Assembly (NCBI GenBank): GCA_038087875.1 | Contig: JAXLNO010005735.1 | Coordinates: 62,001 to 126,000, forward strand | Origin: Malacoraja senta | Lineage: Eukaryota | Reading direction: 5' to 3' | DNA: 64,000 bases | Shown here: positions 17,110 to 62,523 of the stretch, one piece after another | Numbering within the stretch: the first letter of the stretch is position 1 | How the letters are laid out: each line of letters starts with the position of its first letter | Translations under genes and position numbers: made by a program | Notes under the pieces: generated by a model | Seen by the model: the letters and a program-made list of their open reading frames with translations, nothing else | What the model was told of the DNA's origin: nothing | Database searches by the model: none

Positions 17110-17370
17110 GGCCTCACACACTGATCTACTACTACACCCTGAACCACGGGAGTACTCATCTACCAGAATATAGTGTCGTGGGTGAACTGGATGGTTGTGA
17201 GATACAGTATTATGACAAAAACATGGTCATTACAGTTCCAAGACAGAAATGGATGGCGGCTGCATTTGACAGGAATTACTGGGTAACAAATACGGTCTCT
17301 GAAACTGGTTTCCATGGAATCATCAAAGGGCAAGTCGATGAATGGATGCGGAGGCAGAACGAAACAGCAA
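17110..17370 (+). CDS. MHC class I-like heavy chain, alpha1 domain exon (non-classical-looking)
   Basis: Acceptor ttttatttgtgtctAG, donor GTtagt, 261 bp, phase 1/1, no stops. Translation GPHTLIYYYTLNHGSTHLPEYSVVGELDGCEIQYYDKNMVITVPRQKWMAAAFDRNYWVTNTVSETGFHGIIKGQVDEWMRRQNETA has class I alpha1 hallmarks: GxHT/SL start, PE..VG.LDG, PR..WM, YW, terminal N-x-T sequon. Confidence 0.93.
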
Positions 17371-19539
17371 GTTAGTTCATTCATTTCAATACATTTGGAG
17401 TGTGATCAATGTTCATAAAAAAACATCTCAAAGAAATTTCTCGCTGTGCCAGAGACCCAGGTTTGATCCTGACTACACGTTCTCCCTGTGAACACAGATA
17501 TTTCCTCCAGGTTCTCCGGTTCCGTCCCATATCTTGAAAATGTGAGAGTTTGTAGGTTAATTGGGCTCTGTAAATTACTCTTGTGTGCTGAGAATGGGTG
17601 AGGAAAGAGGGATTACATAGATGTGTAGGAAGGAACTGAAGATGCTGGTTTACAGCAAAGATAGGCACAATGTGCTGGAGTAACTCAGCGGGACAGGCAG
17701 CATCTCTGGATACAAGGAATGGATGACTTTTCAGGTCAAGACCCTTCCTCAGACAGAGTGTTTCCCCTGACTTACTCCAGCATTTTGTGTCCATTTTGGG
17801 ATAACATAGAACTAGTGTGAAAGATGATCGATGGTTGGCATGGAATTGGTGGGCAGAATGGCCCATTTCCATGCTGAGTCACTAACCTAAGAACTGCAGA
17901 TGCTGCAAATGTGAAATAAAAACTAAAAAAATTCCATTGTCTGATGGCTTCATTGTCAGTTTATCACCATGGAAACCTGTAATTACCTTATCAGTGATAC
18001 TCCCTATGTCCAACCATGCCTCCCACTCCTGTCTGTAACTTACACATTCTCACAATTCTGAAGCATTAATTTTGTATCTCTTCCCATAGGTTCCATAGGT
18101 AACCAATATTTCAATGATTTGCAAAATGCTGTGCTTCCAGCATTTTACAAATCATTGAAATGTTGGTGGCTTTTTGAATGGTTAAAATCCCTTGCGTACC
18201 TCACCAATTGTTTTTACTTTTATTGACAAATTTAGAATGAAAAGTTGTGTGAAATATTTAAAGGATAACCTAAATGTCATTGTGGTTCAGCCGTAGTGAT
18301 GGTGCCGTAGTGCTATTGACCCAGGGTTGATCCTGGCCTCAGGTGCTGTCTGTACAGAGTTTGTACGTACTCCCCGTGACCTGCGTGGGATTTCCCCGGG
18401 TTCCCCGGTTTCCTCCCACACTCCAAGCCTGTATGCCAAAGGGGATCACTGGTCACTGTGGACTCTAAGGGCTGTTTTCGTGCTATATCTCTAAATTATC
18501 TTGGGCACCAATTGTAAAGTAAGCTGTCCAAATCCATCTGCACCACACTTGTATATCCATATAAGTTGCAATTGGACATGTTTTATATTGTAAATCAATA
18601 AGTCCTATCACCATTACTGTGTTAATTCAATGACATTCGTAGTGTACCATTGAACAAAGCAGGACTAGGCGTGGGGGAACCATGGTGAGGTGGGGAGGGG
18701 GGGGGGACAAAGGAGGACCTGGTGTGGGAGACTTTATAACTTTGTCGGTGCCCTTTATGTGAAGAATCTTGAAATACGTTGGGTTTACAAAACAAAGAAT
18801 TTCACTGTGACTTGTCACATGTCACTATAAAGTATCATTCATTCATGATTAATTATTTCTGAAAACATTGCTTTTTGTTACCTCTTCGGTTACACATTAA
18901 ACAAATTATATTATTAATCTTTAACTGGACTAAAACAGGGTGAGGGTACAAACAGGGAACAATACATCAAAATATTATGCACTGGGCATAATTTCTATCA
19001 ATTTCCCACATCTTGCAATATTTATTATTATTTTCAAATTATATGTGAATACATGTGAATGACGTTTATTACATTATCATCTGATTCATTGAACCATGTT
19101 TATTGAATCATATTGCCTTCAGAAATATTTTTTTAATTTGCATTATTTATGGTGCACATATTATCTGCAACATTGTTATGTTTATGAGATTTATGAGCAT
19201 ATTGTCGGGGCTCAAGGGTGGGAACAAGAGGGAGAGATTGGGCAAGCCAGGGCTTTATTCCATGGAGCACAGGAGGCTGAAAGGGTGATCATATAGTGGT
19301 GCTTAAAATCATGAGGGGAATTGATAGATGTATGCCCAGAGCCTTTTACCCAGAGAAGGGGAATCAAATAACCAGAGGACATGGGTTGAATGTGAGAGGG
19401 GGAAGATTTAATTGGAACTTGGGGGCAAACTTTGTGCTCAGAGAGTGGTCAGCATATGGAATGACCTGCCAGAGAATGGAGTTGCGGCAGGTACAATAAC
19501 AATATTTAAAAGACACATGGACAGGGACATGCATAGGTA

Positions 19540-20012
19540 GATAAAAGTGCTGGAGAAACTCAGCGGTTGAGGCAGCATCTATGGAGCGAAGGAAATAGGC
19601 AACGTTTCGGGCCGAAAACCCTTCTTCAGACTGATGTGAGGGTGGGTGGGAGGGAGGGAGTGGGGCGCAGGAAGAAGAAAGGAAAAGGTGGAGCCAGTGG
19701 GCTGAGGGAGAGCTGAGTAGGGGAGGAGAAAGTAAGGACTACCTGAAATTAAAGAAGTCAATGTTCATACCGTTGGGGTGTAAACTGTCCAAGCGAAATA
19801 TGAGGTGCTGCTCCTCCAATTTACGGTGGTCCTCACTCTGGCCATGGAGGAGGCCGAGGGCAGAAAGGTCGGATTTGGAATGGGAGGGGGGAGTTGAAGT
19901 GCTGATCCACCGGGAGATCAGGTTGGTTGTTGCGAACTGAGCGGAGGTGTTGGGCGAGGCGATCGCCAAGCCTGCGCTTGGTCTCACCGATGTAGAGCAG
20001 CTGACATCTAGA
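19540..20012 (-). mobile_element. Penelope-like 3' fragment with terminal repeat
   Basis: ORF 19739-20041 ...SDLSALGLLHGQSEDHRKLEEQHLIFRLDSLHPNGMNIDF, the GIY-YIG C-terminus. Confidence 0.85.
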
Positions 20013-20859
20013 GAGAAACGTTTTGAATGATGTCTACCCATTGCAGGGTAAATGGGACTAGCTTAAATGGGGTATCTTGATTAGCATGGACAAGTTGGGC
20101 CAAAGGGCTTGTTTCCCTGCTGTGTGACTCTCTCTATGACTGCTTTATAGCAAAGAGCGCTGCTGTCTCACAGCTCCAGTGATCGGGTTCAATCATCTCC
20201 AGTGCAGTCTGTGTGGAGTATAAGCATTCTCCCTGTGACAATGTTTGTTCTCCAGTTTCCTCCCACATACCAAAATGTGCTGATTTAGTAGATTAAGCCA
20301 CCGCTGCAAATAGGTGGATTTGTGGCATTGATAGAAATGAGAAAGATCCGTTTTGGGGAAAATTAGTGGTGGAATGGTTTTGTTCTCTGGGCTAGAGTGG
20401 GCTCAGGAGGCTGAAAGGCCTCTTTCTCTGTCACATGGAATTATGGGCAGTTATTTATCCTTGAATTGCCTTCTTTCTCAATTTAGTCAACAATGTAAAA
20501 TTGAAGTAATTGTCTGGATTGAACTATTTAACAATTGTAGATGAAAGGAAGAGCAAAGGCTGCTTTCCTCCACACACAAAGTGCTAAGGAACTCAACGGG
20601 TCAAGCGGCATCTTTGGAGAACATGGGAAGGCAGATATTTCGGGTGAGGATCCTACTTCAGACTGAAGTTGGGACACGTTAGAACATGCTTTGTACTCAC
20701 ACTTGCAGTCCAGTGTTAGTTTTCAAGGATTTTTTGTTATTCACAGCTTGTAGTTGTTACATATTCAGCAGACAGAAGATGAGCAAACTAAAGCACCTGC
20801 AAAGCACAACTAAAAGACCGCAGAAAGAAGCTTGAAAAGAAGGCTCTTATCTAAACAAA

Positions 20860-22820
20860 GTACTTTCAAGAGAGAGTTAGATTTAGCTCTTAAGACGAAA
20901 GGAATCAAGGGATATGGGGGAAAAGATTAGTTAAAACAAATGTAGGTCCCTTGCAGTCAGAAACAGGTGAATTGATCATGTGGAACAAGGACATGGCAGA
21001 CCAATTGAATAACTACATTGGTTCTGTCTTCACTAAGGAAGACTTAATTAACTGCCGGAAAGAGCAGGGGACCGGGGGTCAAATGAGATGGAGGAATTGA
21101 GTGAAATCCAGGTTAGCCGGGAAGTGGTGTTAGGTAAATTGAATGGATTAAAGGCCGATAAATCCCCAGGGCCAGATAGAGTGCATCCCAGAGTACTTAA
21201 GGAAGTAGCCCCAGAAATAGTGGATGCATTAGTGATAATTTTTCAAAACTCTTTAGATTATGGAGTAGTTCCTGAGGATTGGAGGGTAGCTAATGTAACC
21301 ATACTTTTTGAAAAGGGAGGGAGAGAGAAGTGGGGAACCTGCTAGAGTCCGTTATTAAAGATGGGATAGCAGCACATTAGGAAAATGGTGAAATCATTGG
21401 ACAAAGTCAGCATAGATTTATGAAAGGTAAATCATGTCTGACGAATCTTATAGAATTTTTCGAGGATGTAACTAGTAGAGTGGATAAGGCAGAACCAGTG
21501 GATGTGTTATATCTGGACTTTCAGAAGGCTTTCGACAAGATCCAACATAAGTGATTAGTATACAAACTTAAAGCACATGGTATTGGGGGTTCAGTATTGA
21601 TGTGGATAGAGAACTTGCTGGCAGACAGGAAGCAAAGAGTAGGAGTAAACGGGTCCTTTTTAGAATGGCAGGCAGTGACTAGTGGGGTACCTCAAGGCTC
21701 AGTGCTGGGACCCCAGCTATTTACAATATATATTAATGATTTGGACGAGGGAATTGAATGCAACATCTCCAAGTTTGCGGATGACACGAAGCTGGGGGGC
21801 AGTGTTAGCTGTGAGGAGGGTGCTAGGAGGCTGCAAGGTGACTTGGATAGGCTAGGTGAATGGGCAAATGCATGGCAGGTGCAGTATAATGTGGATAAAT
21901 GTGTGGTTATCCACTTTGGTGGCAAAAACAGGAAAGTAGACTATTACCTGAATGGTGGCCGATTAGGGAAAGGGGAGATGCAACGAGACCTGGGTGTCAT
22001 GGTACACCAGTCATTGAAAGTAGGCATGCAGGTGCAGCAGGCAGTGAAGAAAGCGAATGGTATGTTAACATTCATAGCAAAAGGATTTGAGTATAGGAGC
22101 AGGGAGGTTCTTCTGCAGTTGTTCAGGGTCTTGGTGAGACCACACCTGGAGTATTGCCTACAGTTTTGGTCTCCTAATCTGAGGAAGGACATTGTTGCCA
22201 TAGAGGGAGTACAGAGAAGGTTCACCAGACTGATTCCTGGGATGTCAGGACTTTCATATGAAGAAAGACTGGATACACTCTGCTTGTATTCGCTAGAATT
22301 TAGAAGATTGAGGGGGGATCTTATAGAAACTTACAAAATTCTTAAGGGGTTGGACAGGCTAGATGCAGGAAGATTGTTCCCGATGTTGGGGAAGTCGAGA
22401 ACAAGGGGTCACAGTTTAAGGATAAAGGGGAAATCTTTTAGGACTGAGATGAGAAAAACATTTTTTACACAGAGAGTGCTGAATCTCTGGAATTCTCTGC
22501 CACAGAATGTAGTTGAGGCCAGTTCATTGGCTATATTTAAGAGGGAGTTAGATGTGGCCCTTGTGGCTAAAGGGATCAGGGGGTATGGAGAGAAGGCAGG
22601 TACAGGATACTGAGTTGGATGATCAGCCATGATCATATTGAATGGCGGTGCAGGCTCGAAGGGCCGAATGGCTTGCTCCTGCACCTATTTTCTGTGTTTC
22701 TATGTTTCTAAAAGCAGGAATGGGGTACTGATTCTAGATGCAGGCATGATCATATTGAATGGCGGTGCTGGCTCGAATGGCCGAATGGCCTGCTCCTGTG
22801 CCTATTTTTCTATGTTTCTA
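20860..22820 (+). mobile_element. CR1 LINE ORF2 (RT) fragment with a duplicated tail
   Basis: KADKSPGPDRVHPRVLKE (21088), YLDFQKAFD region, ORF 21597-22613 PQGSVLGP...FADDTK. Two tail copies at about 22620-22710 and 22740-22820. Confidence 0.92.
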
Positions 22821-23306
22821 TAATTAGTATACATTCGGCTATTGGTGGTGTTTCTTGAAAACACGAAGACGAGAGAATGTAAAGGATCTGCAGAACAACT
22901 AAAAGACTGCAGAAAGCAGCTTGAAAAGGAGGCTCTTCATCTATACAACATAATTATGTTTTATTCAGCTATCATTGTTTGTAGAGTTTCTTATTGGTAT
23001 GAAAACATCATCCAAGTTTTGACCCTTCCTTATTACTCCTGGTCCCAGGGGCATGGTTGGCATTAGCTCATTACATTCATCCTAATAAAGGGTTGGTGTT
23101 CACAGTTGTGCCTAGATTTTTATCAATTACAACCTTGAGTTCACAAACTGTTCTTTGTCTCTGGGCTAAAGTTCACAGACTATCCTTTTCAAGGAGTGAG
23201 CAGTTTTAAGCAAACTGACTTCAGCAAATCCTTACAAATTCCATCACCCCCCCCCCCCCACTTTGATTCATCAATCAATGCCAGAGGGAATGAATCATCT
23301 AAGTAA

Positions 23307-23988
23307 AGGGGCCTGTCCCGCTTACGTGTCCGTGGAATGCAAATTACGCGTTGAGCCACGATGGTCCGGCGAAGGTCGGGTGCGATTACATGCGTGCGCA
23401 CAGCCGTCTGGAGCGCGTGACGTTATTTGAAGATGGACACAAAGCTGGAGTAAGCCAGTGGGACCGGCAGCATCTCTGGAGAGAAGCAATGGGTGACGTT
23501 TCATGTCGAGACTCTTCTTCAGTCTGAAAAGAAGGGTCTTGACCCGAAACATCACCCATTGCTTCTCTCCAGAGATGCTGCCGGTCCCGCTGAGTTACTC
23601 CTGCATTTCGTGTCTATCTTCAATTTTCATGGCCCCGCTCTGGGAGTAGAAGTGGGGGCGGATCTGGACCGCAACGGCCGTGAGCCCCAGGCCGAGTTCG
23701 GCGATCGTTCGCCTGCTTCTGCTCCTGTTGAAAGTGAGACTTTGCGTCGCGCCAGGGTCTTGGGCCTGTCCCACTTTGGCCGTCAGTTCCGCGACAGGCC
23801 GTTGGCGCGCGAAGATTTCGTTCACTACAAAATTATTGGAGCCCCGCGCGATGTCGCGCACAACTCCATACCCCTCCGCGCTTCCAAGTGGGACCGGCCC
23901 CGCGCGGCCATACGATGCTCGTGCGCCTCAACGCGACCACAAGGTCGCATAATTTGTGTGCCAAGGACACGTAAGTGGGACAGGCCCT
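23307..23988. mobile_element. PIF/Harbinger MITE containing a palindromic Penelope-tail insertion
   Basis: TIR a(g)gggcctgtccc.cttacgtgtcc / ggacacgtaagtgggacaggccct, with TAA at 23304-23306 and 23989-23991. Confidence 0.85.
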
Positions 23989-24984
23989 TAAGAATACCAA
24001 GGAAAGGTAGCGCAGCTACACATCACTGGATATCTTTAACCTGTTCAATGCCACCGCCGAGTACACTAGGGGTCATGGCCAATAGTGAAAAATAAACTTG
24101 GCAGTGAACAGCTTAATGGTCTCCATATTTTAGAGAAAGCCTTCAATGCCCATGAGGGGTGAGCCTTATTATATCTATGTTTCTCTAAATATAGGAAGCA
24201 CTTTTGTGGTAAAAGATGGGGCAGCTCGGGCCTCGAAAAGATCCAACCTTATGTGCAGCTTTATATTTGTTTATATGCAATAAGCAAAAAGAACACAATA
24301 GAAGATAAAACATGATAATAATTATAAGCAAAGCCAAGAGATCGTGGCCTTACACGAGTTGCTGCCTTGCAGCACCAGAGACCCTGGTTTGAACCCGACT
24401 ACGAGTGGTGACTGTACGGAGTTTGCATGTTCTCCCCGTAACCTGTGTGGCTTTTCTCTGAGATGTAGGTAAATTGGCTTGGTGTAAATGTAAATTGTCC
24501 CTAGTGTGGGCTGAAGGGCCTGTTTCAGCACTGTATCTCCAAAGCAGTGGTTCTTAACCTGGGGGTCGTGACCCCCATGGGGGTCGTTTGGGGTTTTTCC
24601 GGGGGTCATGAAGGGGTTGTAAAGAACATCAATTTGTTGAGCCTATTTTTAGGAACCTAACAAAGGTACATACCACACACAGTATTTTGTTCACGAATGC
24701 GCTTACGTATACACAGGGCCTATGAGAGGGGGGTGCAGGGGGTACATCGTATGCGGGCCCAGAGTCCAATAGGAGCCCGGGAGCTGAAGGAGGGGGGGTG
24801 GGAATTTCCTGAAATCTCAGAAAATGTTTGCATATATTTTGTGAATACTAGCATTCACATTTTGTGCCTTCGGAGTTTTATATATTGTAATTCGTAGAAA
24901 TTGTGATCCATAATAAAGCAGGGAATTTTAACTGATGGTGTGTGGTCGGGGTAACCTGATTAAAAGAGAGGGAAGGGGAAGACC

Positions 24985-25680
24985 TATCACTACTGATGGA
25001 TCTTCCCTGTAGGAGGAGGGAGAGCACTAGGTCCCAACAGAGTCATCACTACTGATGGATCTTCCTGCAGGAGGAGGGAGAGCACTAGGACCCAACAGAG
25101 TCATCACTACTGATGGATCTCCCTGCAGGAGGAGGGCACTAGGACCCAACTGACTGATGGATCTGCCCTATAGTGGGGGGGAGCACTAGGACCCAGCAGA
25201 GTCATCACTACTGATTGATCTTCCCTGCAGGAGGAGGGAGAGCACTAGGACCCAACTGACCGATGGATCTGCCTTATAGGGGGGGGAGCACTAGGACCCA
25301 GCAGAGTCATCACTACTGATTGATCTTCCCTGCAGGAGGAGGGAGAGCACTAGGACCCAACTGACTGATGGATCTTCCTGCAGGAGGAGGGAGAGCACTA
25401 GGACCCAGCAGAGTCATCACTACTGATTGATCTTCCCTGCAGGAGGAGAGCACTAGGACCCAGCTGACCGATGGATCTGCCCTATAGGGGGGGGGGGAGC
25501 ACTAGGACCCAGCAGAGTCATCACTACTGATTGATCTTCCCTGCAGGAGGAGAGCACTAGGACCCAGCTGACCGATGGATCTGCCCTATAGTGGGGGGGG
25601 GAGCACTAGGACCCAGCAGAGTCATCACTACTGATTGATCTTCCCTGTAGGGGGAGGGGGACTAGGAGCCAGCAGAGTTA
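24985..25680 (+). repeat. Minisatellite with alternating ~58-60 bp and ~44-47 bp units
   Basis: About 12-13 repeats of the core gagcactaggaccca followed by either gcagagtcatcactactgattgatcttccctgcagg or actgaccgatggatctgccctatag(g)n. Confidence 0.9.
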
Positions 25681-25914
25681 GACCACGTGCTGCCTGCATG
25701 GTGGAGGTTGTGGGCCTGGTGCTGAACCGGGAAGGTGACGACTCTGGCCCGCTGGTGGCCGGTGGAGAGGCAAGTGTCGGCGGAGTCGCTGGCGGAGGCC
25801 CGTGGGGAGCTGGAGTAGAGATATGGGCTTTCCAGCGACAGTGGCTGTGGTGTCCCCGCCCGGGGAGGTGGTGAGAGTCGGCAGCCACGGCTGTTTCAGT
25901 GGTCCGGGCCTGCG

Positions 25915-26392
25915 TTTGGGTGGGGGTGGGGGTGGGTGTGTGGGAGAGTGGGCGTGGGTAAGTGGGTGGATTTGTGTGGGTGGGGGTGTAGGTCAGTGGG
26001 TGTGGGTCAGTGTGGGNNNNNNNNNNNNNNNNNNNNNNNNNNNNNNNNNNNNNNNNNNNNNNNNNNNNNNNNNNNNNNNNNNNNNNNNNNNNNNNNNNNN
26101 NNNNNNNNNNNNNNNNNNNNNNNNNNNNNNNNNNNNNNNNNNNNNNNNNNNNNNNNNNNNNNNNNNNNNNNNNNNNNNNNNNNNNNNNNNNNNNNNNNNN
26201 NNNNNNNNNNNNNNNNNNNNNNNNNNNNNNNNNNNNNNNNNNNNNNNNNNNNNNNNNNNNNNNNNNNNNNNNNNNNNNNNNNNNNNNNNNNNNNNNNNNN
26301 NNNNNNNNNNNNNNNNNNNNNNNNNNNNNNNNNNNNNNNNNNNNNNNNNNNGTGAGTGTGTGTCTGAGTGTATGTGTGTGTTAGTGGGAGGG
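25915..26392. repeat. TG/GGGT-rich microsatellite around assembly gap 26017-26351
   Basis: gtgggt/gtgt repeats on both sides of 335 N. Confidence 0.85.
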
Positions 26393-26620
26393 TGAATTTT
26401 ATAAATGAAGTTAAAACCATTAGATCTGTTGAACTTTTTAACAGACTATTGACTTGGTAACCTGTTTCCAAATGTTTGTGTTAGCTTCAGAATACTATTA
26501 ACAATTCCAGCAACAGTAGCTTCTGCAGAGAGGTCATTTAGCAAACTCAAGCTGATTAAGAATTATTTAAGGTCGACAATGTCTCATGAACGTCTTGTGG
26601 ATTTGGCCAGGCTAAGTATT

Positions 26621-26995
26621 CAAAGTTAAAGTCAGTTTTATTCATCACATACCCCCGAAGGTGCAGTGAAGTGAATTTGCCAGCAGTGATACATGTAAAA
26701 AGAACACACAATACACAATAAAATTGAACACAAACATCCACTACAGCATTCTTCACTGTGGTGGAAGCCAACAAGTTTCAGCAAGTCCTCCATTGTTCAC
26801 CCGTGTTCGGGGCCATAACCCCTCCGTAGTGGCCGCTAGGGACGGCCCGATGTACAAGGCCCTCTCGTCGGGATGATCCAAACTCCGACGTTGGGACGGA
26901 CAAACACACTCTGCGGCTTGGAGGTCCCGACTCGGCACTTTCCTACTGGAGACCGCAGCTTCAGGATGTTATAGGCCACAGGCCAGCGGTTTTGC
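26621..26995 (-). mobile_element. GC-rich non-autonomous retroposon family, copy 1
   Basis: Shared core acatccac.acag...ttc.tcactgtg.tggaag.caa.aaagt and a Rex-like 3' end, as in the copies at 29405, 31527, 34367 and 45632. Confidence 0.6.
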
Positions 26996-27440
26996 GGTTA
27001 AATATAAAAGGATGTTTCAATGTGAATTCTTTCTCCTTATCTGTATTGTAGCATAAACAAAGATGTTCAAAACAAAGATAGATAAAATGCTGGAGAAACT
27101 CAATGGGTGAGGCAGCATCTATAGAGTGAAGGAAAACAAATGTGCTTGCTGATCCTTTTATGTTATTTATATTTATTTATATTTATCATGGAGGGTGTAT
27201 AGGGACATAAGGCCTCAAATGCAGAAAATCAACAGAGCGCCCCATTCCACCCCTCTCTCATCTTCCATACCCCTTTTTGCCGTGCAGGCTACAGCTCATG
27301 GCATAAAACTGTAGCATAGTGGATAAAAACAGGATGACTAATGGAGAAGGGAAGGGGGCCCAAAAGAAACTTTGTACCCACTGATAAAATTCCTGTGAGG
27401 CCCTGCGTATACACGCACAAACAGTGTGTGTTGTGAACCA

Positions 27441-29192
<1,752 letters not shown>

Positions 29193-29404
29193 CTGAGCAT
29201 TGGCAGACATGTTTTAATAAATCGGGCTGTTTTTTTTCAAATTTTGTTTTAGAGGTCACGGTACTGATCAAGAATGCCTGATGGGGTCGTGGGGCCAAAA
29301 AGATTAAGAACCACTGCTCTAAAGCTTAAAACTAAAGGGGCTAATAAAGGCCACAAAGTGGCTTTAGTGAGTCGGATTACAGAAACTCCCACATCTTTTT
29401 CAAG

Positions 29405-30100: not shown

Positions 30101-30169
30101 AAGGTGGATTGCTTAAGGATATAGAAGGGAATATGTGCTTGGAGTTTGTGGATATAGGCGAGGTTTGGT

Positions 30170-31020: not shown

Positions 31021-31139
31021 ACATGGAGAATCAATGTGGAGAATGCTAACATGCAGGGACACTTTGAAGTTAAGTAAGAAGGAGATGTTGGATCACTTGA
31101 AGAGAAATGTGGATAAATCCCCAGGACAGAGGGGGTGTA

Positions 31140-31345
31140 GTGGATGATAATAATAATTGTTGAAAACATTAGTGCCGTGCTGGTTTCCAACGGGCACGGT
31201 GACGGACGCACCACACATCTCTGTCCTCCATGCAGCTGGCAAGCTCCTCTTTTGTCTCTACACATGCGTCTTCCATCAACGTCTTCAACATCGTCTTGAA
31301 TGGCCATCCTGGGTCAAGTCTTCCATGGGTGGAAGACGCATGCCA
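31140..31345 (-). mobile_element. RTE-type LINE 3' end
   Basis: STHGRLDPGWP..TMLKTLMEDACVETKEELASCMEDRDVW resembles the RTE C-terminus; (att)n-like tail. Confidence 0.65.
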
Positions 31346-32797
31346 GCAAACAGGCATGTCTGGCATTTAATGAGCATTGATGTATATATTGTAGACTTTC
31401 GTCCCAAATATCTTTCGTTATGGGTTGGCCTAATTCATTTTCCCATGTGTGTCTATATAAATCCGTCGGCGGGACCTCACTATCTAAGAGGGTATTATAA
31501 ATATGAGATATTAATTTTTCTGTATTAAGATTCAAGATTCAAGATTCAAGAAGTTTATTGCCATGTCAACTGAGTTGATAGGAATTTGACTTGCCATGCA
31601 GCACACAAATAAAGATTACAACAAAGAATTTAACAGTAAACATAAAAACATCCCCCCACAATGGTTCCCACTGTGGGGGAAGGCAGCAAAGTCCAGTCCC
31701 ATCCCCAGTTCACCCATAGTCGGGGCCTATTGAGGCCTCTGCAGTCGCCGCTACGGCAGCCCGATGCCTCAGGCCCTCTCGCCGGATGATGAAGCTCCGG
31801 CGTCGGGTGAACACTCTCAGCGGCCCGGAGTGTCTGGAGCGGCTGCCTCCTCCCAGTAGACCGCGGCTCCCGAAGTCCACGAGCCGCGCTGGTCGATGCC
31901 CCGACTCTGTCGACCTCGTCGTCAGATCCCAGGCTCCGCGGTGTTCCAAGCTCAGCGCCGCTGGAAGCTCCACTGACCGCAGACCGCAGCTCTGCGATGT
32001 TAGTGCCGGCCGTCACAGCACTCCGGAGCTTACTGCACGGCGACCCGGGTTAGGCATCGCCCGCTCCGCGATGGTGCTTCAGCGCTGTGCCGCCGCCGAA
32101 GCTGAAGTCCTGGCCGGTCCCGGCAGGAAAACGCCGCTCCAGCCTGCCCGTAGGCCGCGAGGAAGGGGCGAAGATACGGCTCGGAGAAAAGCCGCATCTC
32201 CGACCAGGTAGGGACTGAGAAGAATAGTTTCCCCCTTCCCCCTACCCCCCCCCCCCCCACATAAAAAGACTAAAAGATCTCCAACCAACACTCTCAACTA
32301 ACTAAAAATAAAAAAAAGAGTGAAAAAACTAACAGCTGCTGGCGGGGCAGCCATATTCGACGGCGCCCCCTGTTGATGTTATTAGGATGTTTATTCAAAC
32401 ATTCATCAAGGATTTCTGGTTCCCTAGTTCTGTAATCTTGTGTATTTGATTTAATGTAATCTCTAATTTGTAAATATCTGAAAAAGTTATTTGAGTGTGG
32501 TCCGTAAATCTGTTGTAACCCCTGAAATTAAAGAAAAGTGCCTTTCCTATAAAGATGTCCCATCTTTTTAATTCCTTAATTTTTCCATTGTGTAAAGCCT
32601 TTATCCAACATGGAGGGTTTGAATAAAGGGTTGTTTATAATGGGGAGACAGAGTGATAAATTATCCAATTTTAAAGTCTTTTTTAATTGTTTCCAAATTC
32701 GTATACCACTATATATTATAGAATTTTCACTATAGGTTTTTTAATGCAATTTTGTGGGAGCAAACATAATCGAACCAATTTCAAAAGGTAAACAGTC
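31345..32797 (-). mobile_element. L1 ORF2 internal fragment (interrupted at 31527-32352)
   Basis: NTEKLISHIYNTLLDSEVP...HQCSLNARH and DCLPFEIGSIMFA closely match the + strand L1 ORF2 at about 54950-55530. Confidence 0.85.
31527..32352 (-). mobile_element. GC-rich non-autonomous retroposon family, copy 3 (near full length)
   Basis: (ttcaaga)n tail, family core, 5' end ggggcgccgtcgaatatggctgccccgccagcag. Confidence 0.65.
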
Positions 32798-33045
32798 TTT
32801 CACTATTTTGTATGACTCAATGAGGTCCCCCCTTATTCTTCTAAACTCCAGCGAGTACAGGCCCACTGCCATCAAATGGTCATCATATGTTAACCCATTC
32901 ATTCCTGGGATCATTCTTGTACACCTCCTCTGGACACTCTCCAGAGCCAGCACATCCTTCCTCAGATATGGTGCCCAAAATTGCTCACAATGCTCCAAAT
33001 GTGGCCTGACCGGCGCCTTATAGAACCTCAGCATTACATCCCTGT
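32797..33045 (-). mobile_element. CR1 RT fragment lacking its 3' tail, fused to the L1 fragment
   Basis: LRFYKAPVRPHLEHCEQFWAPYLRKD...GDLIESYKIVK then runs directly into L1 sequence. Confidence 0.8.
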
Positions 33046-33369
33046 TTGACAGGGAGAAAGTGTAATTGATGTATTTCATATTAGTTAACCATGGATTTTC
33101 TTGACCACAGTTGACAGCCCCTAATGGGATTGCATGTCTATCACACATCTCAAAAGAGCACAGCATTAAGCTTCGAAGGGCAAAATTTACACGAGTTGTG
33201 CAGGTCAAGTGTTTTTTTTCACAGAGAGAGCTTGATACCTAGAATGCGCTACCAGGAGTGGTGGTAGAGGAAGACATGATAATGGTGCTTAAGAAGGTTT
33301 TGGACAGGCTTGTGAATGTGCAGCGAATACAAGGATATGGATCACATGCAGGCAGTGGAAATCAGTTTT

Positions 33370-33665
33370 GGTTTAGTTTAGAGATAGAGTATGGAAACAG
33401 GATCTTTGGGCCACTGAGTCTGCACTGACCAGCAATTGCCCATTCACTATTTTTGTCCTACAAGCTAGGGACAATTTACAGAAGCCAATTAACCTACAAA
33501 CCTGCACGTCTTTTGTATTTGGGAGGAAACCGTAGCCCCCAGAGAAAACCCACAGGGTGACAGAGAGAACGTACAAACTCCGTCCAGACAGCACTCTAGT
33601 CAGGATCGAACCCGGGTCTCTAATGCTGTAAGACAGCCATTCTATCACTGTGCCACTGTGTTGCC
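33370..33665 (-). mobile_element. HE1-like V-SINE
   Basis: Reverse complement of the SINE consensus. Confidence 0.8.
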
Positions 33666-34366
33666 TTAGTTTTTACTTGGTATCCTGTTCGACATGGACA
33701 TTGCAGGCTGAAAGTCCTGTTCTTGTACTGTTCTATGTTCTATATATTCTCATTGGACAGGGCAGAGTTTTTCACTCCTCCAGCCTCCATGTTGAATACT
33801 TACTCCCAGTTTAAATCTGATTCAATTAGTCAATCCATTTCTCCCCCCCCCCTCCTGCCCTGATCCCCATTCTATATCTTGAAGTAGTCATTCCATTTTT
33901 CGCTCCCTGGTCTGTCTACTATCCCCACAACTTTCCTCTACTTTCCTGTCTTGGTGCATGCAACATCTATCCATTTACCTCTTCCCTTCCTACTGTCCAT
34001 AGACCCAGGCAGTTCTTCAAAGTGAAACAGCGTGAAACACTTGCACTTCCAGTCAAATCTACTGCATTTGGTTTTCATGACGTAATCTTCCACATCGCAT
34101 CAATGAAACAAATTGAGTGGCTGCGTTCTGGAGAACCCGCATTCAATCCATGGGACTTTCTAAGATTCCTAATTCCTGCCACTTTAATTCTCCATTCAAC
34201 ACCCACCATGATCCATCCATCTGTACCTCTTACACTAGGATAACAAGGGTGAAAGTAACCTTGAGGACCAACAACTCAGCTTCTACCTTGACATGTTGCA
34301 GCCTTTCACACTCAATTCCACGTTCAACAAGTTGTATTCCCTGTCGATAAAAGAACTGGTCATTTC

Positions 34367-34870
34367 ATAAGTTCATGTTCATTTATTCTCACATACACCA
34401 ATTGGTGTAGTAAAATTCACTGGCCAGGTCAGTCATACAATTTTAAAAAGCAACAGACTCAAAAACACATTTTGACATAAACATCCATCATAGTGACTCC
34501 TACACATTCCTCACTGTGATAGAAGGCGAAAATAAAGTTCCAAGTCCTTCCCTTGTTGTTCCTCCTTGGTCGGGGGCCTCGAGCCCCCCGTTGAACGGAC
34601 GGTCTTGAGTCCCGTAGCCGGCGGCGTTCGGGCCCTCCGCGTCGAGGTGATCAGCTCCCGCATCGGGGGGATTGTCAGCTCCCCTGCGCCGGGCGATCGA
34701 ACCTCGCGTCGGGGCTGGACGAACCTTCTGTGGCGTTGGAGCTCCCGACTAGCCTCTCCCGAGACTGGGAGCCCTTGATGGTAAGTTCGCAGGCCGCGTT
34801 GGGAGCGATCCCAGGCAAGGGATCCGCTCAGATGGTAAGTCCACGCCCCGTGGTGGGGCTCACGACGGTC
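34367..34870 (-). mobile_element. GC-rich non-autonomous retroposon family, copy 4
   Basis: Core cattcctcactgtgatagaaggcgaaataaagttc and a CpG-rich body. Confidence 0.6.
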
Positions 34871-35670
34871 CTTTTCAACTGTTAAGTTGAAGTCAGAAAG
34901 AACAGATGCAAGAAGTATGAAGAAGGACACCAAGCTGAAACATTACGTAACCATGTCTTCCAGATGCTGCCTGAGCCACTGAGTTACACCTGCACGTTTT
35001 TGTGTTTTTTTTAAATTACAGTAAAGTTATCCACCTGCAAAATCAGGACAGCCTGACCTACTTGAGTACTGCAGTATGTGCTGCATTTTATATAACTCTG
35101 TTTAGTTTCATGCATGCAGAGATGCAGTGAAATGGTTTGGATGGAACAGCAGATGCTGGACACCCCGTCCCTTCTCTCCAGAGATGCTGCCTGTCCCGCT
35201 GAGTTACTCCAGCTTTTTGTGTCTGTCTGCAGTGAAATGGTTGTTCTGCATTCTCCCCAGTCAAGTCATACTGTACATAAGTACAATTCGTCCTCTTCTG
35301 GAACAGCACGCAGAGATCCACCACATTCCACGGACTATCTTGCAGCTTTCAAGTCTCTGAGAAGTCTGATTTTGCCCTAAGGAAATACCCAATTTCACAT
35401 TTTCTCATGTTAAGGCCCAGTGTCATAACAGCACTGGATTGATGAAGTAGAGGCGCCTGCCTCAGTTTAAGTTTTTCTGTTTCAAGATTGTGATCAAACC
35501 CTCGTCACTGGAACTGTGCCGCAGTGCCACCCATTACGTATCAGTCCCAATTATCTTTCAACATGCTGGAATCACTTGTTTTTTATCCTTTTTAGACTTT
35601 TTTCATGAATTGTTCAGCTTAAACAGTTATGCTACAGCAATTAAGCGCAGCTACCACTTAGTTCCAGAGA

Positions 35671-35872
35671 CGTAACAACACAAGAGATAGTGTTGGATGA
35701 ATGATCAAACTCACACATAGTGGTTAGAATCCATAGTCTTTTATTAGTAACTCTGCAGAGGAAACACAAGGTGCTTTCTTCTCAGCATGCTTACTACCAG
35801 TCTACCAGAGAGAGAGAGAGCTGTCTAATAAGCCTGTGGGCGGAGCCACAGTATGAGTGACACTAATCTACA
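35671..35872 (-). mobile_element. Possible solo LTR
   Basis: The minus strand starts TGTAG, contains AATAAA and ends ...GTTAC(G). Flanks gaga/gata could be a degraded 4-bp TSD. Confidence 0.35.
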
Positions 35873-35924
35873 GATAGGCACAGGGATAAGTTTCGGTTTA
35901 TTATTGTCACGTTTAGTTTCGAGG

Positions 35925-36205
35925 TACAGCATGAAAATAGGCCTTTTGGCCCACTGAACCTGTGCTGACTAACGACCACCCAAATATTAGTTCTATCCTA
36001 CACACTAGGGACAATTTACAGAAGCCAAAAAACTTACAAACCTGCACGTCTTTGAATGTGACGGAACTGTAGCACCCGGAGATAACTCACATGGTCACAG
36101 GGAGAATGTATGAACTCTATATAGACAGCACCCATTGTCAGGATTGAACTTTGGTCTGTGGTACTGTAAGGCAGCAACTTTCCCTCTGCGCCACTGTGCT
36201 GCCCA
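35925..36205 (-). mobile_element. HE1-like V-SINE
   Basis: Reverse complement of the SINE consensus. Confidence 0.78.
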
Positions 36206-37508
36206 TGTACTGAGGTAGAGTGTAAAGCTTTGTTTTGCATGCTATCCAATTGGATGAGGTAACAAAATACATATATATGATCATCAAACTCAAGTACTGT
36301 AGGTAGAGCAAAGGGGAAGGTACAGAGTGTGGCATGTAGTTCTCAGCAATGTAGCACAGCAGTTCCATTAGATAAGTGTTTCGACACGAAACGTGACACA
36401 TTCCTTCTCTCCAGAGATGCTGCCTGACCCGTTGAGTTACTCTAGCATTTTGTGTCTATCTGCGGTTTAAACCAGCATCTACAGTTCCTCCCTACATAGT
36501 TCTATAAACAAAGTCCACTGTCTTTAATGGGGTAGTGGTCAATTGGACAGTACCCTAGCTTATGGAACGATCATTCAGAAGCCTGATTTTCTCCTCGGTT
36601 ATCAAGTTTCCGAGTAAGCCATTTGGTCCTCTAACCTGCCCACCATTCAATATGACCATGGCTGACGTTCCTCAGGCATCAACTCCTGTTCGATGTCAGT
36701 TCCTCATTGCACTCAGTTCTCCAATTTAAGTTTAATTAAGTTAACTACCGCCACATTAAATGCTTCCAATGATTTTGTCTTCACAAATCTCTGGCGCCAG
36801 AGAATGACCACACTCTGCAAAAAGAGATTTTGTAAACAAATGACTGGTCTCTTTTATCTCTTATTGAAGAGGAGTGAAAATACTGCCAATTTTAAGCTTG
36901 TCCCCTCCCCAATTGACCCTCATTTCGTAACTTGTCAATTATTTATTATTGTCAATAATATGCCCTAGTGAAAAGATTTGCCGATGGTATTAGTTTATTA
37001 TTGTCACATGAACTGTGATATAGTCAAAAGTTTGTCTGTGTGTTATCCAATCAGATCATACTACACATGTGCAATCAAGCCATCCACAAGTAGAACAGTG
37101 CAAAGAGAAAAATTCTCAGAGTGCAGAATATCGGGTTACAATATCATAGCATTACAGTTACAGAGAAAGTGCAGATCAAAAAGAGTTGCAAGGATCACAA
37201 TGAGATTGGTTGGAAGATCAGGGCAACATCTTATCTTACATGAGAACCATTCAGTAGTCCAATAACAGTGGGGAAGAAGCTGTTCCTGAATTTAATGGTA
37301 CGTACTTTCAAACTTTCTTGTGTACTGTCTTAACAGGGAGCGTGCGATCCCTTTTAAACCACGTGGTTGGTTGATGGTGCCGAAAGAGGCAAAATGGGGC
37401 AGATGTGGACAGTTAACTTGGTTGTTGTAGTGGACTGAAGAATATTTTGTGGTGGGTGACTGTGCAAGTTTTACTGAAGATGAAAATAACCATCTTACTG
37501 TCTTGTAG

Positions 37509-37775
37509 TTTCCCCTGAGGTCACTCTCGCTGCCCGCCCTGATGATCATTCAGTCCTGTACTGCACTGTGTTTGGATTTTACCCACCGGCCATCAATGTC
37601 AGCTGGTTGCAGAATGGTCAACATGTCTCTGAGACCAAATCTTCTGGGGTCATACCCAACAACGATGGAACATATCATCTAAGGTCTGTCCTTGAGTATG
37701 ATCCGTATGATGGGAAACAGTATTCCTGTCATGTCGATCACAGCAGCCTGCCCGGTGGGAAGACCATCATCTGGG
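37509..37775 (+). CDS. MHC class I-like heavy chain, alpha3 (Ig C1) exon
   Basis: Acceptor ctgtcttgtAG, donor GTaaga, 267 bp, phase 1/1. SPEVTL...LYCTVFGFYPPAINVSWLQNG...SSGVIPNNDGTYHL...EYDP...YSCHVDHSSL...W contains both Ig cysteines, the GFYP motif and the class I alpha3 PNxDGTY motif. Confidence 0.95.
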
Positions 37776-38119
37776 GTAAGAACGTTAAATATTCTTTCAT
37801 AGATAATCATTATCTTCTGTTGTTTCCATTTTAATCATCATGAATACATCCCATATTCCAAGATGCTTAAACTTTCTTTGTTTAGTGGTGTTGCTCTAAG
37901 TAATCACGTAATCAGCACCCACTCTCCACATGAGCAGAAGACTTTGTCAACAGAACATTTATCAAAAGTAAATAAATAACTAATATATAAGGAAGGAGTA
38001 TTTGAGATTCTCAGTGGTGGAACTGAAATCTATGAAAGGTATGTTTAAATACAAAATGAATCTTTCCTCATGATGTGATTAACAACAAGGCACTGGGGGA
38101 GTACATGCCCCAATCTGAA

Positions 38120-38790
38120 TCAATGGTCCGAAGTGGAAATGATTGAGAGCTTCATGTTCCTTGGCATGAATTTATCCAATATTCTGTAAAGGACTGACCA
38201 CATAGCCAAGGAGGCACACCGACACCTCTACTTCCTCAGGAGACTGAGAATATTCATCATGTCTCTGGTGACTCTAGCAAACATCTATAGATGCCGCTAG
38301 AGAAAGCATGTTGTTGGGTTGCATCACATCTTGATTTGGGAACTGCACTGCCCAAGACTGCAAGAATATACAAAGAGTTAAAGATCATCACACAGGCCAG
38401 ACTTCCCACTATTGGCTCAATCTACACTAGGTTGCCTTGGAAAACGAGACTTATCCCAACCTTCCTCCTTCTTGCTCCCATCAGGCATTAGGTACAGAAA
38501 GTTGAAAATATGCACTGCCAGACTCAGGAACACCCCCTTTCCACCTGTTAACAGGCTTCGGAAGGGTCCTTCCATAATGTAGGTTTAATGCCCGATTCAC
38601 CTCAACCTCATTGAACATTGAACATTGTCCATGGAACTGATGTGTTACAATGCTGAGAACTATATTCTGTACTCTGTATCCTCCTCTTTGCTCTATCTAT
38701 TGTTTTTGAGTTTGTATTTATGTATAGTTTTATAATTTGTTTGGATAGCATACAAAACAAACTTTGCTCATATTTTGAAACATCTGGCGT
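38120..38790 (+). mobile_element. Degenerate Rex1/Babar-type LINE 3' fragment
   Basis: VEMIESFMFLG...HLYFLRRLR...IYRC resembles the 7680-8590 element; tail ...taataaaactaaacctaa. Confidence 0.65.
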
Positions 38791-40464
38791 TAATAAAACT
38801 AAACCTAATGAAGTAAGTTCCATGACGCAAGTTACAGATTCAGCAACGAAAAATATAACTGCCTGACAAACAGCGATCGTAGAAGTTTGATTCCAAGTAT
38901 GCTGCACTAACCTACACAAATGCTCACTTTTGAAGATTCCCTCGAACAATGCACAACTAAGGAATCTGATGTTTCACTCTGAAGACTGTTGACATACCCC
39001 AGAACTTAATTTCCAACCTATCTATGTATCATCAGCAATCTAGGCTACAGCGCCACCAGTCCCTTCATCTGCTCTTAATACCAACGATAAGTAGTTCACT
39101 TTCTTGCATTGATTCCCAACCTGCAGTTGCAGTTTCCCAACCAGAACACTCCTTTAAGACAACTCTCTGCTTGCTCTTAATTGTTTTTCCATTCATGCTA
39201 ATTATTACCCCCAATGTCATAAGCCATGTGCCTTTGCATCACTTGATCAGATATCTTATGAAAATCCAGATATTGTGGCGACATCTGGTGGTCAGGCCAC
39301 TTATTGCTAGAACCCTCGTCAGGGGAGCTGGGACTATCACGTGAGTGACAGGGTTTTGGTGGGAGTTGGTGATGAGTTAATCGCCAGTCAACTGGTGTGC
39401 CCGATAACAACGGCAGGAACTTTGCTCAAGTCCTTACTAAACGCGAGTGGGCCAAAACTGTATTTCTTTAAAAAAACATTGATTTGTTCACGACGTTTGG
39501 ATCTCTACAATATATTGTATTTCTTTTGTTTCTCATTCCAATTTTGTTACCTATTCTGCTTTTCCATCATTTTGTTTATGAATTTTAGGCTTTTCACACC
39601 TGCTGCTCGAATATACATTGTCTACGGGTTCCTGTTGCATTTTCAAAGAGTTCTAATCAATTTCTCAAACAAAGTTTGAAGAAGGGTCCCAAAACGAAAC
39701 GTCACCTGTCCATGTGTAAGAAGAAACTGCAAATGCTGGTTTACACCAAAGATGGACACAAATTGCTGGAATAACTCAGCTGGTCAGCCAGCATCTCTGG
39801 AGAAAAGGAATAGGTGATGAATCCATGTTCGCCAGAGATACTGCCTGTTCCGCTGAGTTACTCCAGCATTTTGTGTCTATTATGTATATTCTTTCCACTG
39901 ACTGGTTAGCATGAAACAAAAGCTTTTCACTGTACCTCAATACATGTGACAATAAACTAAACTAAAGCTTTTGTGTAAATCAGTATCTGCATCTCTTTCT
40001 TTCTACAATTTTCCTGATAATGCCCTGATAATGCACTTTATTGTTTTGTTATTACTTAAATGTTCTGCCATTATTGAAAGGAATCCAGCATTTTTCCCAA
40101 AACAAATGTTAGTTTATATAGGGTTAAAGCTTTCTGCTTTCAATTCACCTTCTTTCATGAATTAAGTTGTGGCTGTGATGGTGCCATATATCATAGAGTT
40201 GTACAGAACATATATTGTCCCTTTGCCATGCTGCAGAACTCCGTGATTCAAAACACCATATCATCTTATATACCTTGAAAAGCCCCAAATATAGACACAA
40301 AATGCTGGAGTAACTCAGCGGTCAGGTAACATCTCTGGAGAAAAGGAATAGGTGGCATTTCGGGTCGAGACCCTTCTTCACCCTGAAGTCTTCAGACAGT
40401 GCCCATCTATTTAGCTGCACAGCTTAACAATTGATTTGTAAAATTATGCATTCTTATTTTTCAG

Positions 40465-40572
40465 AAGGAAATAGGAAGAAAGACAGGCACATAGGCCTTA
40501 TTGCCGTGTGTGTGCTGATATTGCTGGCTATTGTCTTGGCAGTAATTGTTTTGTGGAGAAAAAAGAGGAGAG
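40465..40572 (+). CDS. MHC class I-like connecting peptide / transmembrane exon
   Basis: Acceptor ttcttatttttcAG, donor GTaaga, 108 bp, phase 1/1. (E)GNRKKDRHIGLIAVCVLILLAIVLAVIVLWRKKRR: about 22 hydrophobic residues followed by a basic stop-transfer cluster. Confidence 0.9.
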
Positions 40573-51718: not shown

Positions 51719-51847
51719 NNNNNNNNNNNNNNNNNNNNNNNNNNNNNNNNNNNNNNNNNNNNNNNNNNNNNNNNNNNNNNNNNNNNNNNNNNNNNNNNNN
51801 NNNNNNNNNNNNNNNNNNNNNNNNNNNNNNNNNNNNNNNNNNNNNNN
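51719..51847. other. Assembly gap (129 N) in the L1 inter-ORF region
   Basis: Run of N. Confidence 1.
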
Positions 51848-62482: not shown

Positions 62483-62523
62483 ATTATCAAAATATTCAAC
62501 CAAAGCAGAACGTGCACTGCTAA
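62483..62523 (+). CDS. Candidate terminal cytoplasmic exon of the class I-like gene (DYQNIQPKQNVHC*)
   Basis: Strong acceptor atttaatttccctcctcAG. Phase 1 matches the TM exon. Gives a YxxI motif then TAA, with ATTAAA at about 62556 and AATAAA at 62575-62580. Its link to the TM exon across a 21.9 kb intron is inferred. Confidence 0.62.

What the first reader, a model, noticed from the sequence alone, without database searches (positions are those of the whole stretch)
17110..40572. MHC class I-like gene apparently lacking the alpha2 exon (alpha1-alpha3-TM architecture)
Seen: clean, stop-free alpha1, alpha3 and TM exons with canonical splice sites, all phase 1/1, so alpha1 splices in frame to alpha3. 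I read the 20 kb between them and found transposons and short unique stretches, but no ~276-bp exon with HT.Q..YGC...DG.D...W...C..WL. The only gap there lies inside a hAT whose TSDs match on both sides. Established: class I needs alpha1+alpha2 to form a groove, and human HLA-G2 (alpha1+alpha3) is a spliced form proposed to dimerise in a class II-like way. Inference: this is either a genomically fixed half-groove class I molecule with class II-like domain organisation, a pseudogene that recently lost alpha2, or an assembly collapse. Intact remaining exons favour the first or a very recent loss.
Basis: partly seen in the sequence, partly recalled or inferred. Interest (0 to 1): 0.9.

Follow-up and report, generated by a model that had tools for sequence, protein, structure and literature searches.

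The report
Skate class I gene, alpha2 exon deleted
A skate copy of a conserved shark/ray non-classical MHC class I gene has lost its alpha2 exon through a mapped deletion of about 1.4 kb, so it is most likely a young dead or null gene rather than a new two-domain immune molecule.

Summary
The alpha1 (17110-17370), alpha3 (37509-37775), TM (40465-40572) and tail (62483-62523) exons are intact, in phase 1 and canonically spliced. No alpha2 exon exists anywhere in the 64 kb: the best DNA-profile hit has E 6.8, against 5e-94 and 3e-102 for the alpha1 and alpha3 controls.

The window is collinear, intron by intron, with the same gene in three skates (Amblyraja radiata, Leucoraja erinacea, Rhinoraja longicauda) at about 90, 90 and 86% DNA identity. 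All three carry alpha2. Their alignments place the missing exon between window 31332 and 32798. About 1.42 kb of ancestral sequence there is replaced by 23 bp of filler plus an internal LINE fragment that carries a nested insertion.

The assembly gap (26017-26351) is irrelevant. It lies about 5 kb away, inside a hAT insertion whose empty site with a single CTCTAAAG is seen in R. longicauda.

The Ig domain is class I alpha3-type (W37, P57, G61), so this is not a class II-type W-category chain.

The surviving exons carry 6 lineage-private changes in 680 sites, against 112 in 3294 intron sites. They show no decay, so the loss is recent or the gene is still constrained. Best reading: a young pseudogene or null allele (about 0.68). 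A working alpha1-alpha3 chain remains possible (about 0.12).

First readers flagged similar "alpha2-less" genes on other pieces of this genome. Those notes are unverified.

The parts
17110..17370 (+). alpha1 exon (phase 1-1), intact
   Evidence: 85-91% aa identity in tblastn to skate proteins P0154, P0157 and P0164 (93% to P0164 by my own residue count over the exon); nhmmer E 5e-94
24545..29316 (+). hAT-like transposon inserted in the alpha1-alpha2 intron; contains the assembly gap
   Evidence: TIRs 24545-24559 and 29302-29316 (pair I9); TSD CTCCAAAG/CTCTAAAG; empty site in L003; transposase remnant with hAT-type C-terminus at 28629-29189 (motif recognised by eye, no Pfam hit)
26017..26351 (.). 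assembly gap (N run) inside the hAT, within a G/T-rich repeat array
   Evidence: repeat family D4 lies on both sides of the gap
31144..31332 (+). last conserved intron block before the deletion (left anchor); equals L001 52781-52963 and L002 ~53796-53990
31333..31355 (.). 23-bp filler at the left junction. Its first 10 nt, with the preceding TGG, form a 13-nt inverted copy of 31263-31275
   Evidence: 2 occurrences in the window, 0 expected by chance
31356..31531 (-). LINE-derived fragment, part 1 (reverse complement of window 55539-55364, 83% identity)
31532..32379 (.). nested 848-bp repeat insertion splitting the LINE fragment; TSD TATTAAGAT/TATTAGGAT (8 of 9)
32380..32797 (-). LINE-derived fragment, part 2 (reverse complement of window 55372-54954, 79.5% identity); joins the right anchor through a short TCTT overlap
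32798..34367 (+). first conserved intron block after the deletion (right anchor); equals L002 55413-56942, L003 from 30569 and L001 from 60342
37509..37775 (+). alpha3 exon, C1-set Ig domain of class I alpha3 type (W37, P57, G61), intact, with no lineage-private substitution
   Evidence: (PF07654, E 3e-20)
40465..40572 (+). connecting peptide / transmembrane exon, intact
   Evidence: 94% identity to P0154
43983..61328 (.). 17.3-kb window-specific transposon block in the last intron. It includes a LINE with EN and RT ORFs (52079-54747) and a second gap at 51719-51847
62483..62523 (+). cytoplasmic tail exon (D)YQNIQPKQNVHC with its stop codon; AATAAA at 62575-62580

Best explanation
The window holds most of a skate copy of a non-classical MHC class I gene. 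The copy appears orthologous to its relatives, with the leader exon lying upstream of the window. The lineage is conserved across sharks, rays and skates. It includes NCBI 'class I histocompatibility antigen, F10 alpha chain-like' proteins such as A. radiata XP_032898133, and the solved chain 9ch4_A. It may be one of the CD1-like UFA/UGA lineages.

In this copy the alpha2 exon and about 1.1 kb of flanking intron were removed by a genomic deletion. The junction (31333-32797) now holds 23 bp of partly templated filler and an internal, antisense LINE fragment that later received, or already carried, a nested insertion.

Because all class I domain exons are phase 1-1, the remaining exons still join in frame. 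They would encode a chain of about 250 residues: leader, alpha1, alpha3, TM and a YQNI tail. Without alpha2 the chain cannot build the two-helix, eight-strand ligand platform on its own.

Shown: the exon structure, the absence of alpha2, the position and make-up of the junction, that the gap plays no part in the loss, and that the exons have not decayed.

Inferred: the locus is a young pseudogene or null allele, and the deletion arose by double-strand-break repair.
For: (1) Every relative found has alpha2. This covers 17 homologues from skates, rays and sharks, all carrying the Pfam MHC_I domain (PF00129) and all but one exon-skipped L. erinacea isoform also carrying C1-set (PF07654). It also covers the solved 268-residue alpha1-alpha2-alpha3 chain 9ch4_A.

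(2) The window is collinear over its whole length with the A. radiata, L. erinacea and R. longicauda genes. Their alpha2 exons sit 480-500 bp after the left anchor (in the two Rajidae loci) and about 665 bp before the right anchor (in L. erinacea and R. longicauda). In the window those anchors end at 31332 and start at 32798, and unrelated repeat DNA lies between them.

(3) The junction has repair hallmarks. There is a 13-nt inverted templated copy, a LINE piece truncated at both ends with no target-site duplication, and a short overlap at the right junction.

(4) No alpha2-like sequence exists anywhere in the 64 kb.

(5) The gap is inside a clean hAT insertion.

(6) No alpha2-less product of this lineage appears among the database hits or cluster members.
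Against: The remaining exons show no sign of being dead. They have no stops or frameshifts, and the splice sites, the stop codon and a poly(A) signal at 62575-62580 are all present.

They carry only 6 lineage-private substitutions in 680 sites, against 112 in 3294 flanking intron sites (ratio 0.26, Fisher p 1.5e-4). Alpha3 has none. That ratio is at least as low as in the intact R. longicauda gene (0.44).

If the exons became neutral at the deletion, the deletion must fall in the last 14-39% of the terminal branch.

The nested insertion's TSD already has 1 mismatch in 9, which hints that the junction is not brand new, provided the LINE piece arrived with the deletion.

Whether an intact copy exists elsewhere in this genome is unknown.
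Confidence: 0.68

Rival explanations
1. A working, genome-encoded two-domain class I chain. The alpha1-alpha3-TM product is made and kept by selection. It might act as a beta2m-free homodimer in the manner proposed for the HLA-G2 splice form, or as a receptor ligand that needs no groove.
For: All four remaining exons and their splice signals are intact. Exon substitutions on this lineage run at 0.26 of the intron rate. The endosomal-type YQNI tail and the stop codon are kept. HLA-G2, which lacks alpha2, forms a functional homodimer (PMC11756389). Predicted in-frame exon-skipped isoforms exist for the L. erinacea gene.
Against: The in-frame junction is automatic for phase 1-1 exons. The low substitution count cannot be split into before and after the deletion, so a recent loss explains it equally well. 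No alpha2-less relative exists in any of the other species or cluster members examined. The junction looks like an accident of repair. There is no expression evidence. The finding was chosen because its exons looked intact, which biases the sample towards young losses.
Confidence: 0.12
2. An assembly artefact. The alpha2 exon exists in the animal but was dropped by a local misassembly or by the collapse of two copies.
For: The assembly has gaps (26017-26351 and 51719-51847) and the locus is rich in repeats. First readers noted several 'alpha2-less' class I genes on other pieces of the same genome. That could point to a systematic problem, or simply to alpha2 exons the readers did not recognise.
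Against: The junction lies in gap-free sequence. Its left side is unique intron followed by 23 bp of filler with a templated inverted copy. A false join would be expected inside a shared repeat, not there. The order of all other intron blocks is preserved. The gap lies inside a transposon whose two ends flank a single empty site in R. longicauda.
Confidence: 0.08
3. A native class II-type (W-category-like) chain that never had a second membrane-distal domain.
For: The alpha1-Ig-TM layout resembles the WA chain architecture described in cartilaginous fish (PMC8713811).
Against: The Ig domain has W37, P57 and G61. That is the class I alpha3 / WB beta2 pattern. WA alpha2 is beta2m-like, with W61 and no W37. 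Orthologues at 86-90% DNA identity carry alpha2 at the exact place where the window has a deletion scar. No head-to-head partner gene lies in the window.
Confidence: 0.01

Closest known systems
Elasmobranch non-classical class I lineage of A. radiata XP_032898133, L. erinacea XP_055486429 / LOC129716032, R. longicauda XP_078272153 and PDB 9ch4_A (possibly the CD1-like UFA/UGA genes mentioned in PMC10751288 and PMC12562908)
   Same: Alpha1 is 85-91% identical in tblastn, alpha3 88-94%, and the TM exon 94% identical to the A. radiata protein. The tail motif YQNI is shared with the A. radiata and L. erinacea proteins. Exon order, phases and very long introns match. Intron blocks are collinear at 86-90% DNA identity.
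   Different: The alpha2 exon is deleted. The assignment to UFA or UGA is my inference, drawn from the CD1-like tail, the existence of a solved structure and conservation across elasmobranchs. No named sequence was available to test it.
HLA-G2 / HLA-G6 (alpha2-lacking isoforms of human HLA-G)
   Same: An in-frame alpha1-alpha3 heavy chain. This is a precedent showing that such a chain can fold, dimerise without beta2m and bind receptors (PMC11756389).
   Different: HLA-G2 is made by alternative splicing from a gene that keeps exon 3. Here the exon is gone from the genome, so no full-length product is possible from this copy.
W-category MHC (WA/WB) of Okamura et al. 2021 (PMC8713811)
   Same: One membrane-distal domain plus one Ig domain plus a TM region. 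Class I-like residues in the Ig domain (P57, G61) are shared with WB beta2.
   Different: The membrane-distal domain here is alpha1-type while the Ig domain is alpha3/beta2-type, a combination that neither WA nor WB has. The architecture is secondary, produced by a deletion. No paired partner gene is present.
MHC class I gene fragments and pseudogenes produced by birth-and-death evolution of class I families
   Same: One essential exon was lost through a transposon-associated rearrangement, in a family that expands and contracts. R. longicauda has at least 10 copies.
   Different: There are no secondary lesions yet, and the exon substitution rate is still at the level of a constrained gene.

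Membership tests
MHC class I heavy chain | alpha1 domain homologous to class I alpha1 | tested here: met
   phmmer against PDB: 9ch4_A E 6e-37; classical class I chains E 3e-9 to 1e-4. The Pfam MHC_I model alone did not score the isolated exon.
MHC class I heavy chain | alpha2 domain (with its disulphide pair) that completes the ligand platform | tested here: not met
   No hit in the 64 kb by tblastn, nhmmer or hmmsearch. The orthologous site is occupied by filler and repeat DNA.
MHC class I heavy chain | C1-set alpha3 domain with class I-type W37, P57 and G61, followed by a TM region | tested here: met
   PF07654, E 3e-20. The residues were read against the definitions in PMC8713811. TM exon.
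Elasmobranch lineage of XP_032898133 / 9ch4_A | high identity and a collinear gene structure with named members | tested here: met
UFA/UGA CD1-like lineages | identity to a sequence published under that name; lipid-binding groove | not testable with these tools
   Only text mentions were found. No named sequence is in the library, and the supplement search gave nothing.
W-category alpha chain (WA) | beta2m-like Ig domain with W61 and F/L instead of W37 | tested here: not met
   The window Ig domain has G61 and W37.
W-category alpha chain (WA) | head-to-head partner beta-chain gene carrying an alpha2/beta1-type exon | tested here: not met
   No alpha2/beta1-like exon was found on either strand of the window. 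The partner could lie outside the 64 kb.
HLA-G2-type alpha1-alpha3 isoform | in-frame alpha1-alpha3 junction | tested here: met
   Phase 1 donor at 17370 and phase 1 acceptor at 37509 give the junction codon A+TT.
HLA-G2-type alpha1-alpha3 isoform | arises by skipping an alpha2 exon that is present in the gene | tested here: not met
   The exon is absent from the genome.
Pseudogene | loss of an essential coding part | tested here: met
   The alpha2 deletion is mapped.
Pseudogene | relaxed constraint or secondary lesions in the remaining exons | tested here: not met
   No stops or frameshifts. 6 private changes in 680 exon sites against 112 in 3294 intron sites. This is compatible with a very young pseudogene.
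Pseudogene | no transcript or protein | not testable with these tools
   No expression data for this genome are available. No alpha2-less product was found in the protein collections.

The most novel reading that the evidence does not exclude
The alpha2-less gene is not dead. After the deletion, the skate kept a genome-encoded alpha1-alpha3-TM chain with an endosomal YQNI tail under purifying selection. This would be a hard-wired counterpart of the HLA-G2 splice form, derived from a CD1-like class Ib lineage. It might act as a homodimer or a groove-less ligand.
Probability: 0.12. Interest if true: 0.8.

Novelty: new member of a known kind. Interest (0 to 1): 0.3.

Why it matters
If this is only a young pseudogene or null allele, it is an ordinary product of birth-and-death turnover in a class Ib family. 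Its use would be mainly as a warning for annotation, because the in-frame phase 1-1 exons make such a relic look like a clean gene.

The case would matter more in two situations. In the first, this is the species' only copy of a lineage otherwise conserved across elasmobranchs. That would be a natural knockout of a putative lipid-presenting molecule. In the second, the truncated chain is expressed and constrained. That would be a natural experiment on whether an alpha1-alpha3 class I chain can work without a conventional groove, a question raised by HLA-G2 and by models of how class I and class II architectures interconverted.

Tried and rejected
- W-category or class II-type chain: rejected on the Ig-domain residues and on the orthologue structure.
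- Alpha2 hidden in the gap: rejected.
- Alpha1 and alpha3 from different paralogues: rejected by collinearity, and because both match the same relatives.
- Missing leader exon as a sign of decay: rejected. Collinearity with L001 puts the leader about 14 kb upstream of the window start.
- Weak tblastn hits to alpha2 at 28021-28194 and 34797-34850 (E 0.16 to 7): they lie in the hAT transposase remnant and in repeat DNA, and the profile searches did not reproduce them.
- Pfam on the isolated alpha1 exon gave nothing. Pfam on the hAT ORFs and on other ORFs in the window also gave nothing.
- The look-up of encoding contigs for P0001: not on record.
- Searching papers for '9CH4' returned only unrelated hits. 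The supplement search for UFA/UGA or the A. radiata accession found nothing useful.
- Dating the deletion from the LINE fragment failed. The only related copies are 66-83% identical, too distant to build a consensus.
- I could not fold the hypothetical alpha1-alpha3 product, because a concatenated sequence has no reference.
Full report
**1. What is there**

- Alpha1 (17110-17370) translates without stops to an 86-residue class I alpha1-type domain.
- Alpha3 (37509-37775) translates to an 88-residue C1-set Ig domain, Pfam PF07654, E 3e-20.
- 40465-40572 translates in phase 1 to a connecting peptide, a hydrophobic span and RKKRR.

All three have ag/gt borders and phase 1 at both ends. I add a fourth exon at 62483-62523. 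It encodes (D)YQNIQPKQNVHC and a stop, and AATAAA follows at 62575-62580.

The leader exon is not in the window. Collinearity with the A. radiata gene puts it about 14 kb to the left of position 1. Its absence therefore says nothing about decay.

**2. What family it belongs to**

Alpha1 and alpha3 both hit one solved chain best. This is 9ch4_A, 268 residues, laid out alpha1-alpha2-alpha3, with E 6e-37 and 8e-35.

A scan of 1.8 billion representative proteins with alpha1, followed by cluster look-ups, gave close relatives from skates:
- Leucoraja erinacea XP_055521884/85 and XP_055486429
- Amblyraja radiata XP_032898133
- at least ten near-identical paralogues in Rhinoraja longicauda

Searching with the A. 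radiata protein found 17 homologues in skates, sawfish, rays and several shark orders. All carry the Pfam MHC_I domain, and all but one exon-skipped L. erinacea isoform also carry C1-set. This is a conserved elasmobranch class Ib lineage.

Two reviews mention CD1-like, MHC-linked, low-copy UFA and UGA genes of sharks and rays, with a crystal structure (PMC10751288, PMC12562908). The YQNI tail and the solved structure make it plausible that this is one of them. I could not test that, so it stays an inference.

**3. The gap, tested first**

The N run (26017-26351) lies in the intron, not in coding sequence.

It sits inside a hAT-like element spanning 24545-29316. The element has terminal inverted repeats CAGTGGTTCTTAACC (pair I9) and an 8-bp target duplication CTCCAAAG/CTCTAAAG. 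The same G/T-rich repeat family flanks the gap on both sides, and tandem arrays run up to the gap. This explains why the assembly broke there.

In the R. longicauda orthologue the two flanks are adjacent, with a single CTCTAAAG between them. Whatever the gap hides is therefore inside a lineage-specific transposon. I did not try to fill it.

**4. Is alpha2 anywhere?**

No. Three searches agree.
- tblastn with alpha2 from the skate and shark relatives of this gene found nothing below E 0.1 in the whole window, on either strand.
- An nhmmer profile built from the three orthologous alpha2 exons gave a best E of 6.8. The same procedure found alpha1 at E 5e-94 and alpha3 at E 2.7e-102.
- A protein HMM of alpha2 from 17 family members, run against 3119 six-frame segments, gave a best E of 2.4.

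**5. Where it went**

I fetched the genes of A. radiata (L001, 78 kb), L. erinacea (L002) and R. longicauda (L003). All have the order leader, alpha1, alpha2, alpha3, and L001 and L003 also TM and tail (L002's contig ends about 3 kb after alpha3), with introns of 3-32 kb.

The window aligns to them block by block in the same order, at about 90, 90 and 86% identity. So alpha1 and alpha3 belong to one gene. The window also looks like an orthologue from a skate that branches outside Amblyraja plus Leucoraja, since those two are 96-97% identical to each other.

The last block before alpha2 ends at window 31332 (L002 53990, L001 52963). The first block after alpha2 starts at window 32798 (L002 55413, L003 30569, L001 60342). 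In L. erinacea these anchors enclose 1422 bp, with the alpha2 exon at 54471-54749.

In the window the anchors enclose 1465 bp of unrelated DNA:
- 23 bp of filler. Its start, together with the preceding TGG, is a perfect 13-nt inverted copy of 31263-31275. That motif occurs only twice in the window, with none expected by chance.
- An antisense fragment from inside a LINE ORF2 region (31356-31531 plus 32380-32797). It is truncated at both ends and has no target duplication.
- An 848-bp nested insertion that splits the LINE fragment, with a TSD matching at 8 of 9 positions.

The right junction shows a short TCTT overlap.

Two histories fit. In one, a single double-strand-break repair captured LINE sequence and lost 1.4 kb. 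In the other, an ordinary LINE insertion next to the right anchor was followed by a deletion of about 2 kb or more, which removed its 3' part together with alpha2. I cannot tell these apart. Either way, the features look like a real chromosomal event, not a false join.

**6. Dead or alive?**

The in-frame alpha1-alpha3 junction carries no weight, because all class I domain exons are phase 1-1. Predicted exon-skipped isoforms of the L. erinacea gene show the same property.

I counted substitutions private to the window lineage in alignments with the orthologues:

| Lineage | Exon sites | Intron sites | Ratio |
|---|---|---|---|
| Window | 6 of 680 | 112 of 3294 | 0.26 (Fisher p 1.5e-4) |
| R. 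longicauda (intact gene) | 20 of 528 | 103 of 1200 | 0.44 |

Alpha3 has no private change at all. The six private changes in the window exons are two synonymous changes and four nonsynonymous ones, giving three amino-acid changes: V>E in alpha1, W>L in the TM region and N>K in the tail. Pairwise dN/dS against the orthologues is 0.26-0.49, the same range as between the intact genes.

The exons were therefore under constraint for most of this branch. If they became neutral at the deletion, the deletion falls in the last 14-39% of the branch, depending on the assumed constraint. This fits a recent loss, and it fits continued function equally well.

Three points tip me towards a young pseudogene or null allele:
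- Every other member examined keeps alpha2.
- The platform cannot form from alpha1 alone.
- The finding was selected for having intact exons.

**7. Comparison with known things**

It is not a W-category or class II-type chain. WA chains have a beta2m-like Ig domain with W61 and no W37, whereas this Ig domain has W37, P57 and G61 as in class I alpha3. In addition, the architecture is secondary.

It resembles the HLA-G2 splice form in product layout only.

It is best filed as an exon-deleted member of a known class Ib lineage.

**8. Other notes from the scan**

First readers flagged several other 'alpha2-less' class I-like genes on other pieces of this genome. None was checked here. They may be other lineages whose alpha2 was not recognised, or copies of this locus. 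Whether they share the 31332/31333 junction is the quickest way to learn if the truncated form was duplicated.

Noticed in passing
window 52079-56040 (+), within the block 43983-61328: A LINE with long open EN (Exo_endo_phos) and RT (RVT_1) ORFs sits in a 17.3-kb transposon block. The block is absent from the A. radiata and R. longicauda orthologous introns and stretches the last intron to 22 kb. The LINE family may have been active recently.
   Followed up: partly
window 31263-31275 and 31330-31342: A perfect 13-nt inverted copy lies at the deletion junction. It looks like snap-back templated filler from end-joining repair.
   Followed up: partly
window 25054-25671: A tandem array of about 104 bp (5.9 copies) and G/T-rich arrays lie inside the hAT, next to the gap. 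A fragment with a hAT-type C-terminal motif from a different subfamily lies at about 26490-26620.
   Followed up: partly
R. longicauda chromosome CM130181.1 (L003 and cluster members P0164, P0178-P0186): This lineage, described in reviews as single- or low-copy, has at least ten near-identical annotated paralogues on one R. longicauda chromosome.
   Followed up: no
L. erinacea LOC129716032 (P0152, P0153, P0155, P0169): Annotated isoforms skip alpha1 or alpha3 in frame, and some read through into a GPR139-like receptor gene. These are probably read-through models.
   Followed up: no
window 37775-37834; L002 64758-64817: The annotated C-terminus of L. erinacea XP_055486429 (GKNVKYSFIDNHYLLLFPF) is intron read-through, and its contig ends about 3 kb downstream, before the TM exon. 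The same open stretch is conserved at the start of the window's intron.
   Followed up: yes
window 9613-10911 (-) and 21597-22613 (+): Further reverse-transcriptase remnants (RVT_1) are present. I did not examine it.
   Followed up: no
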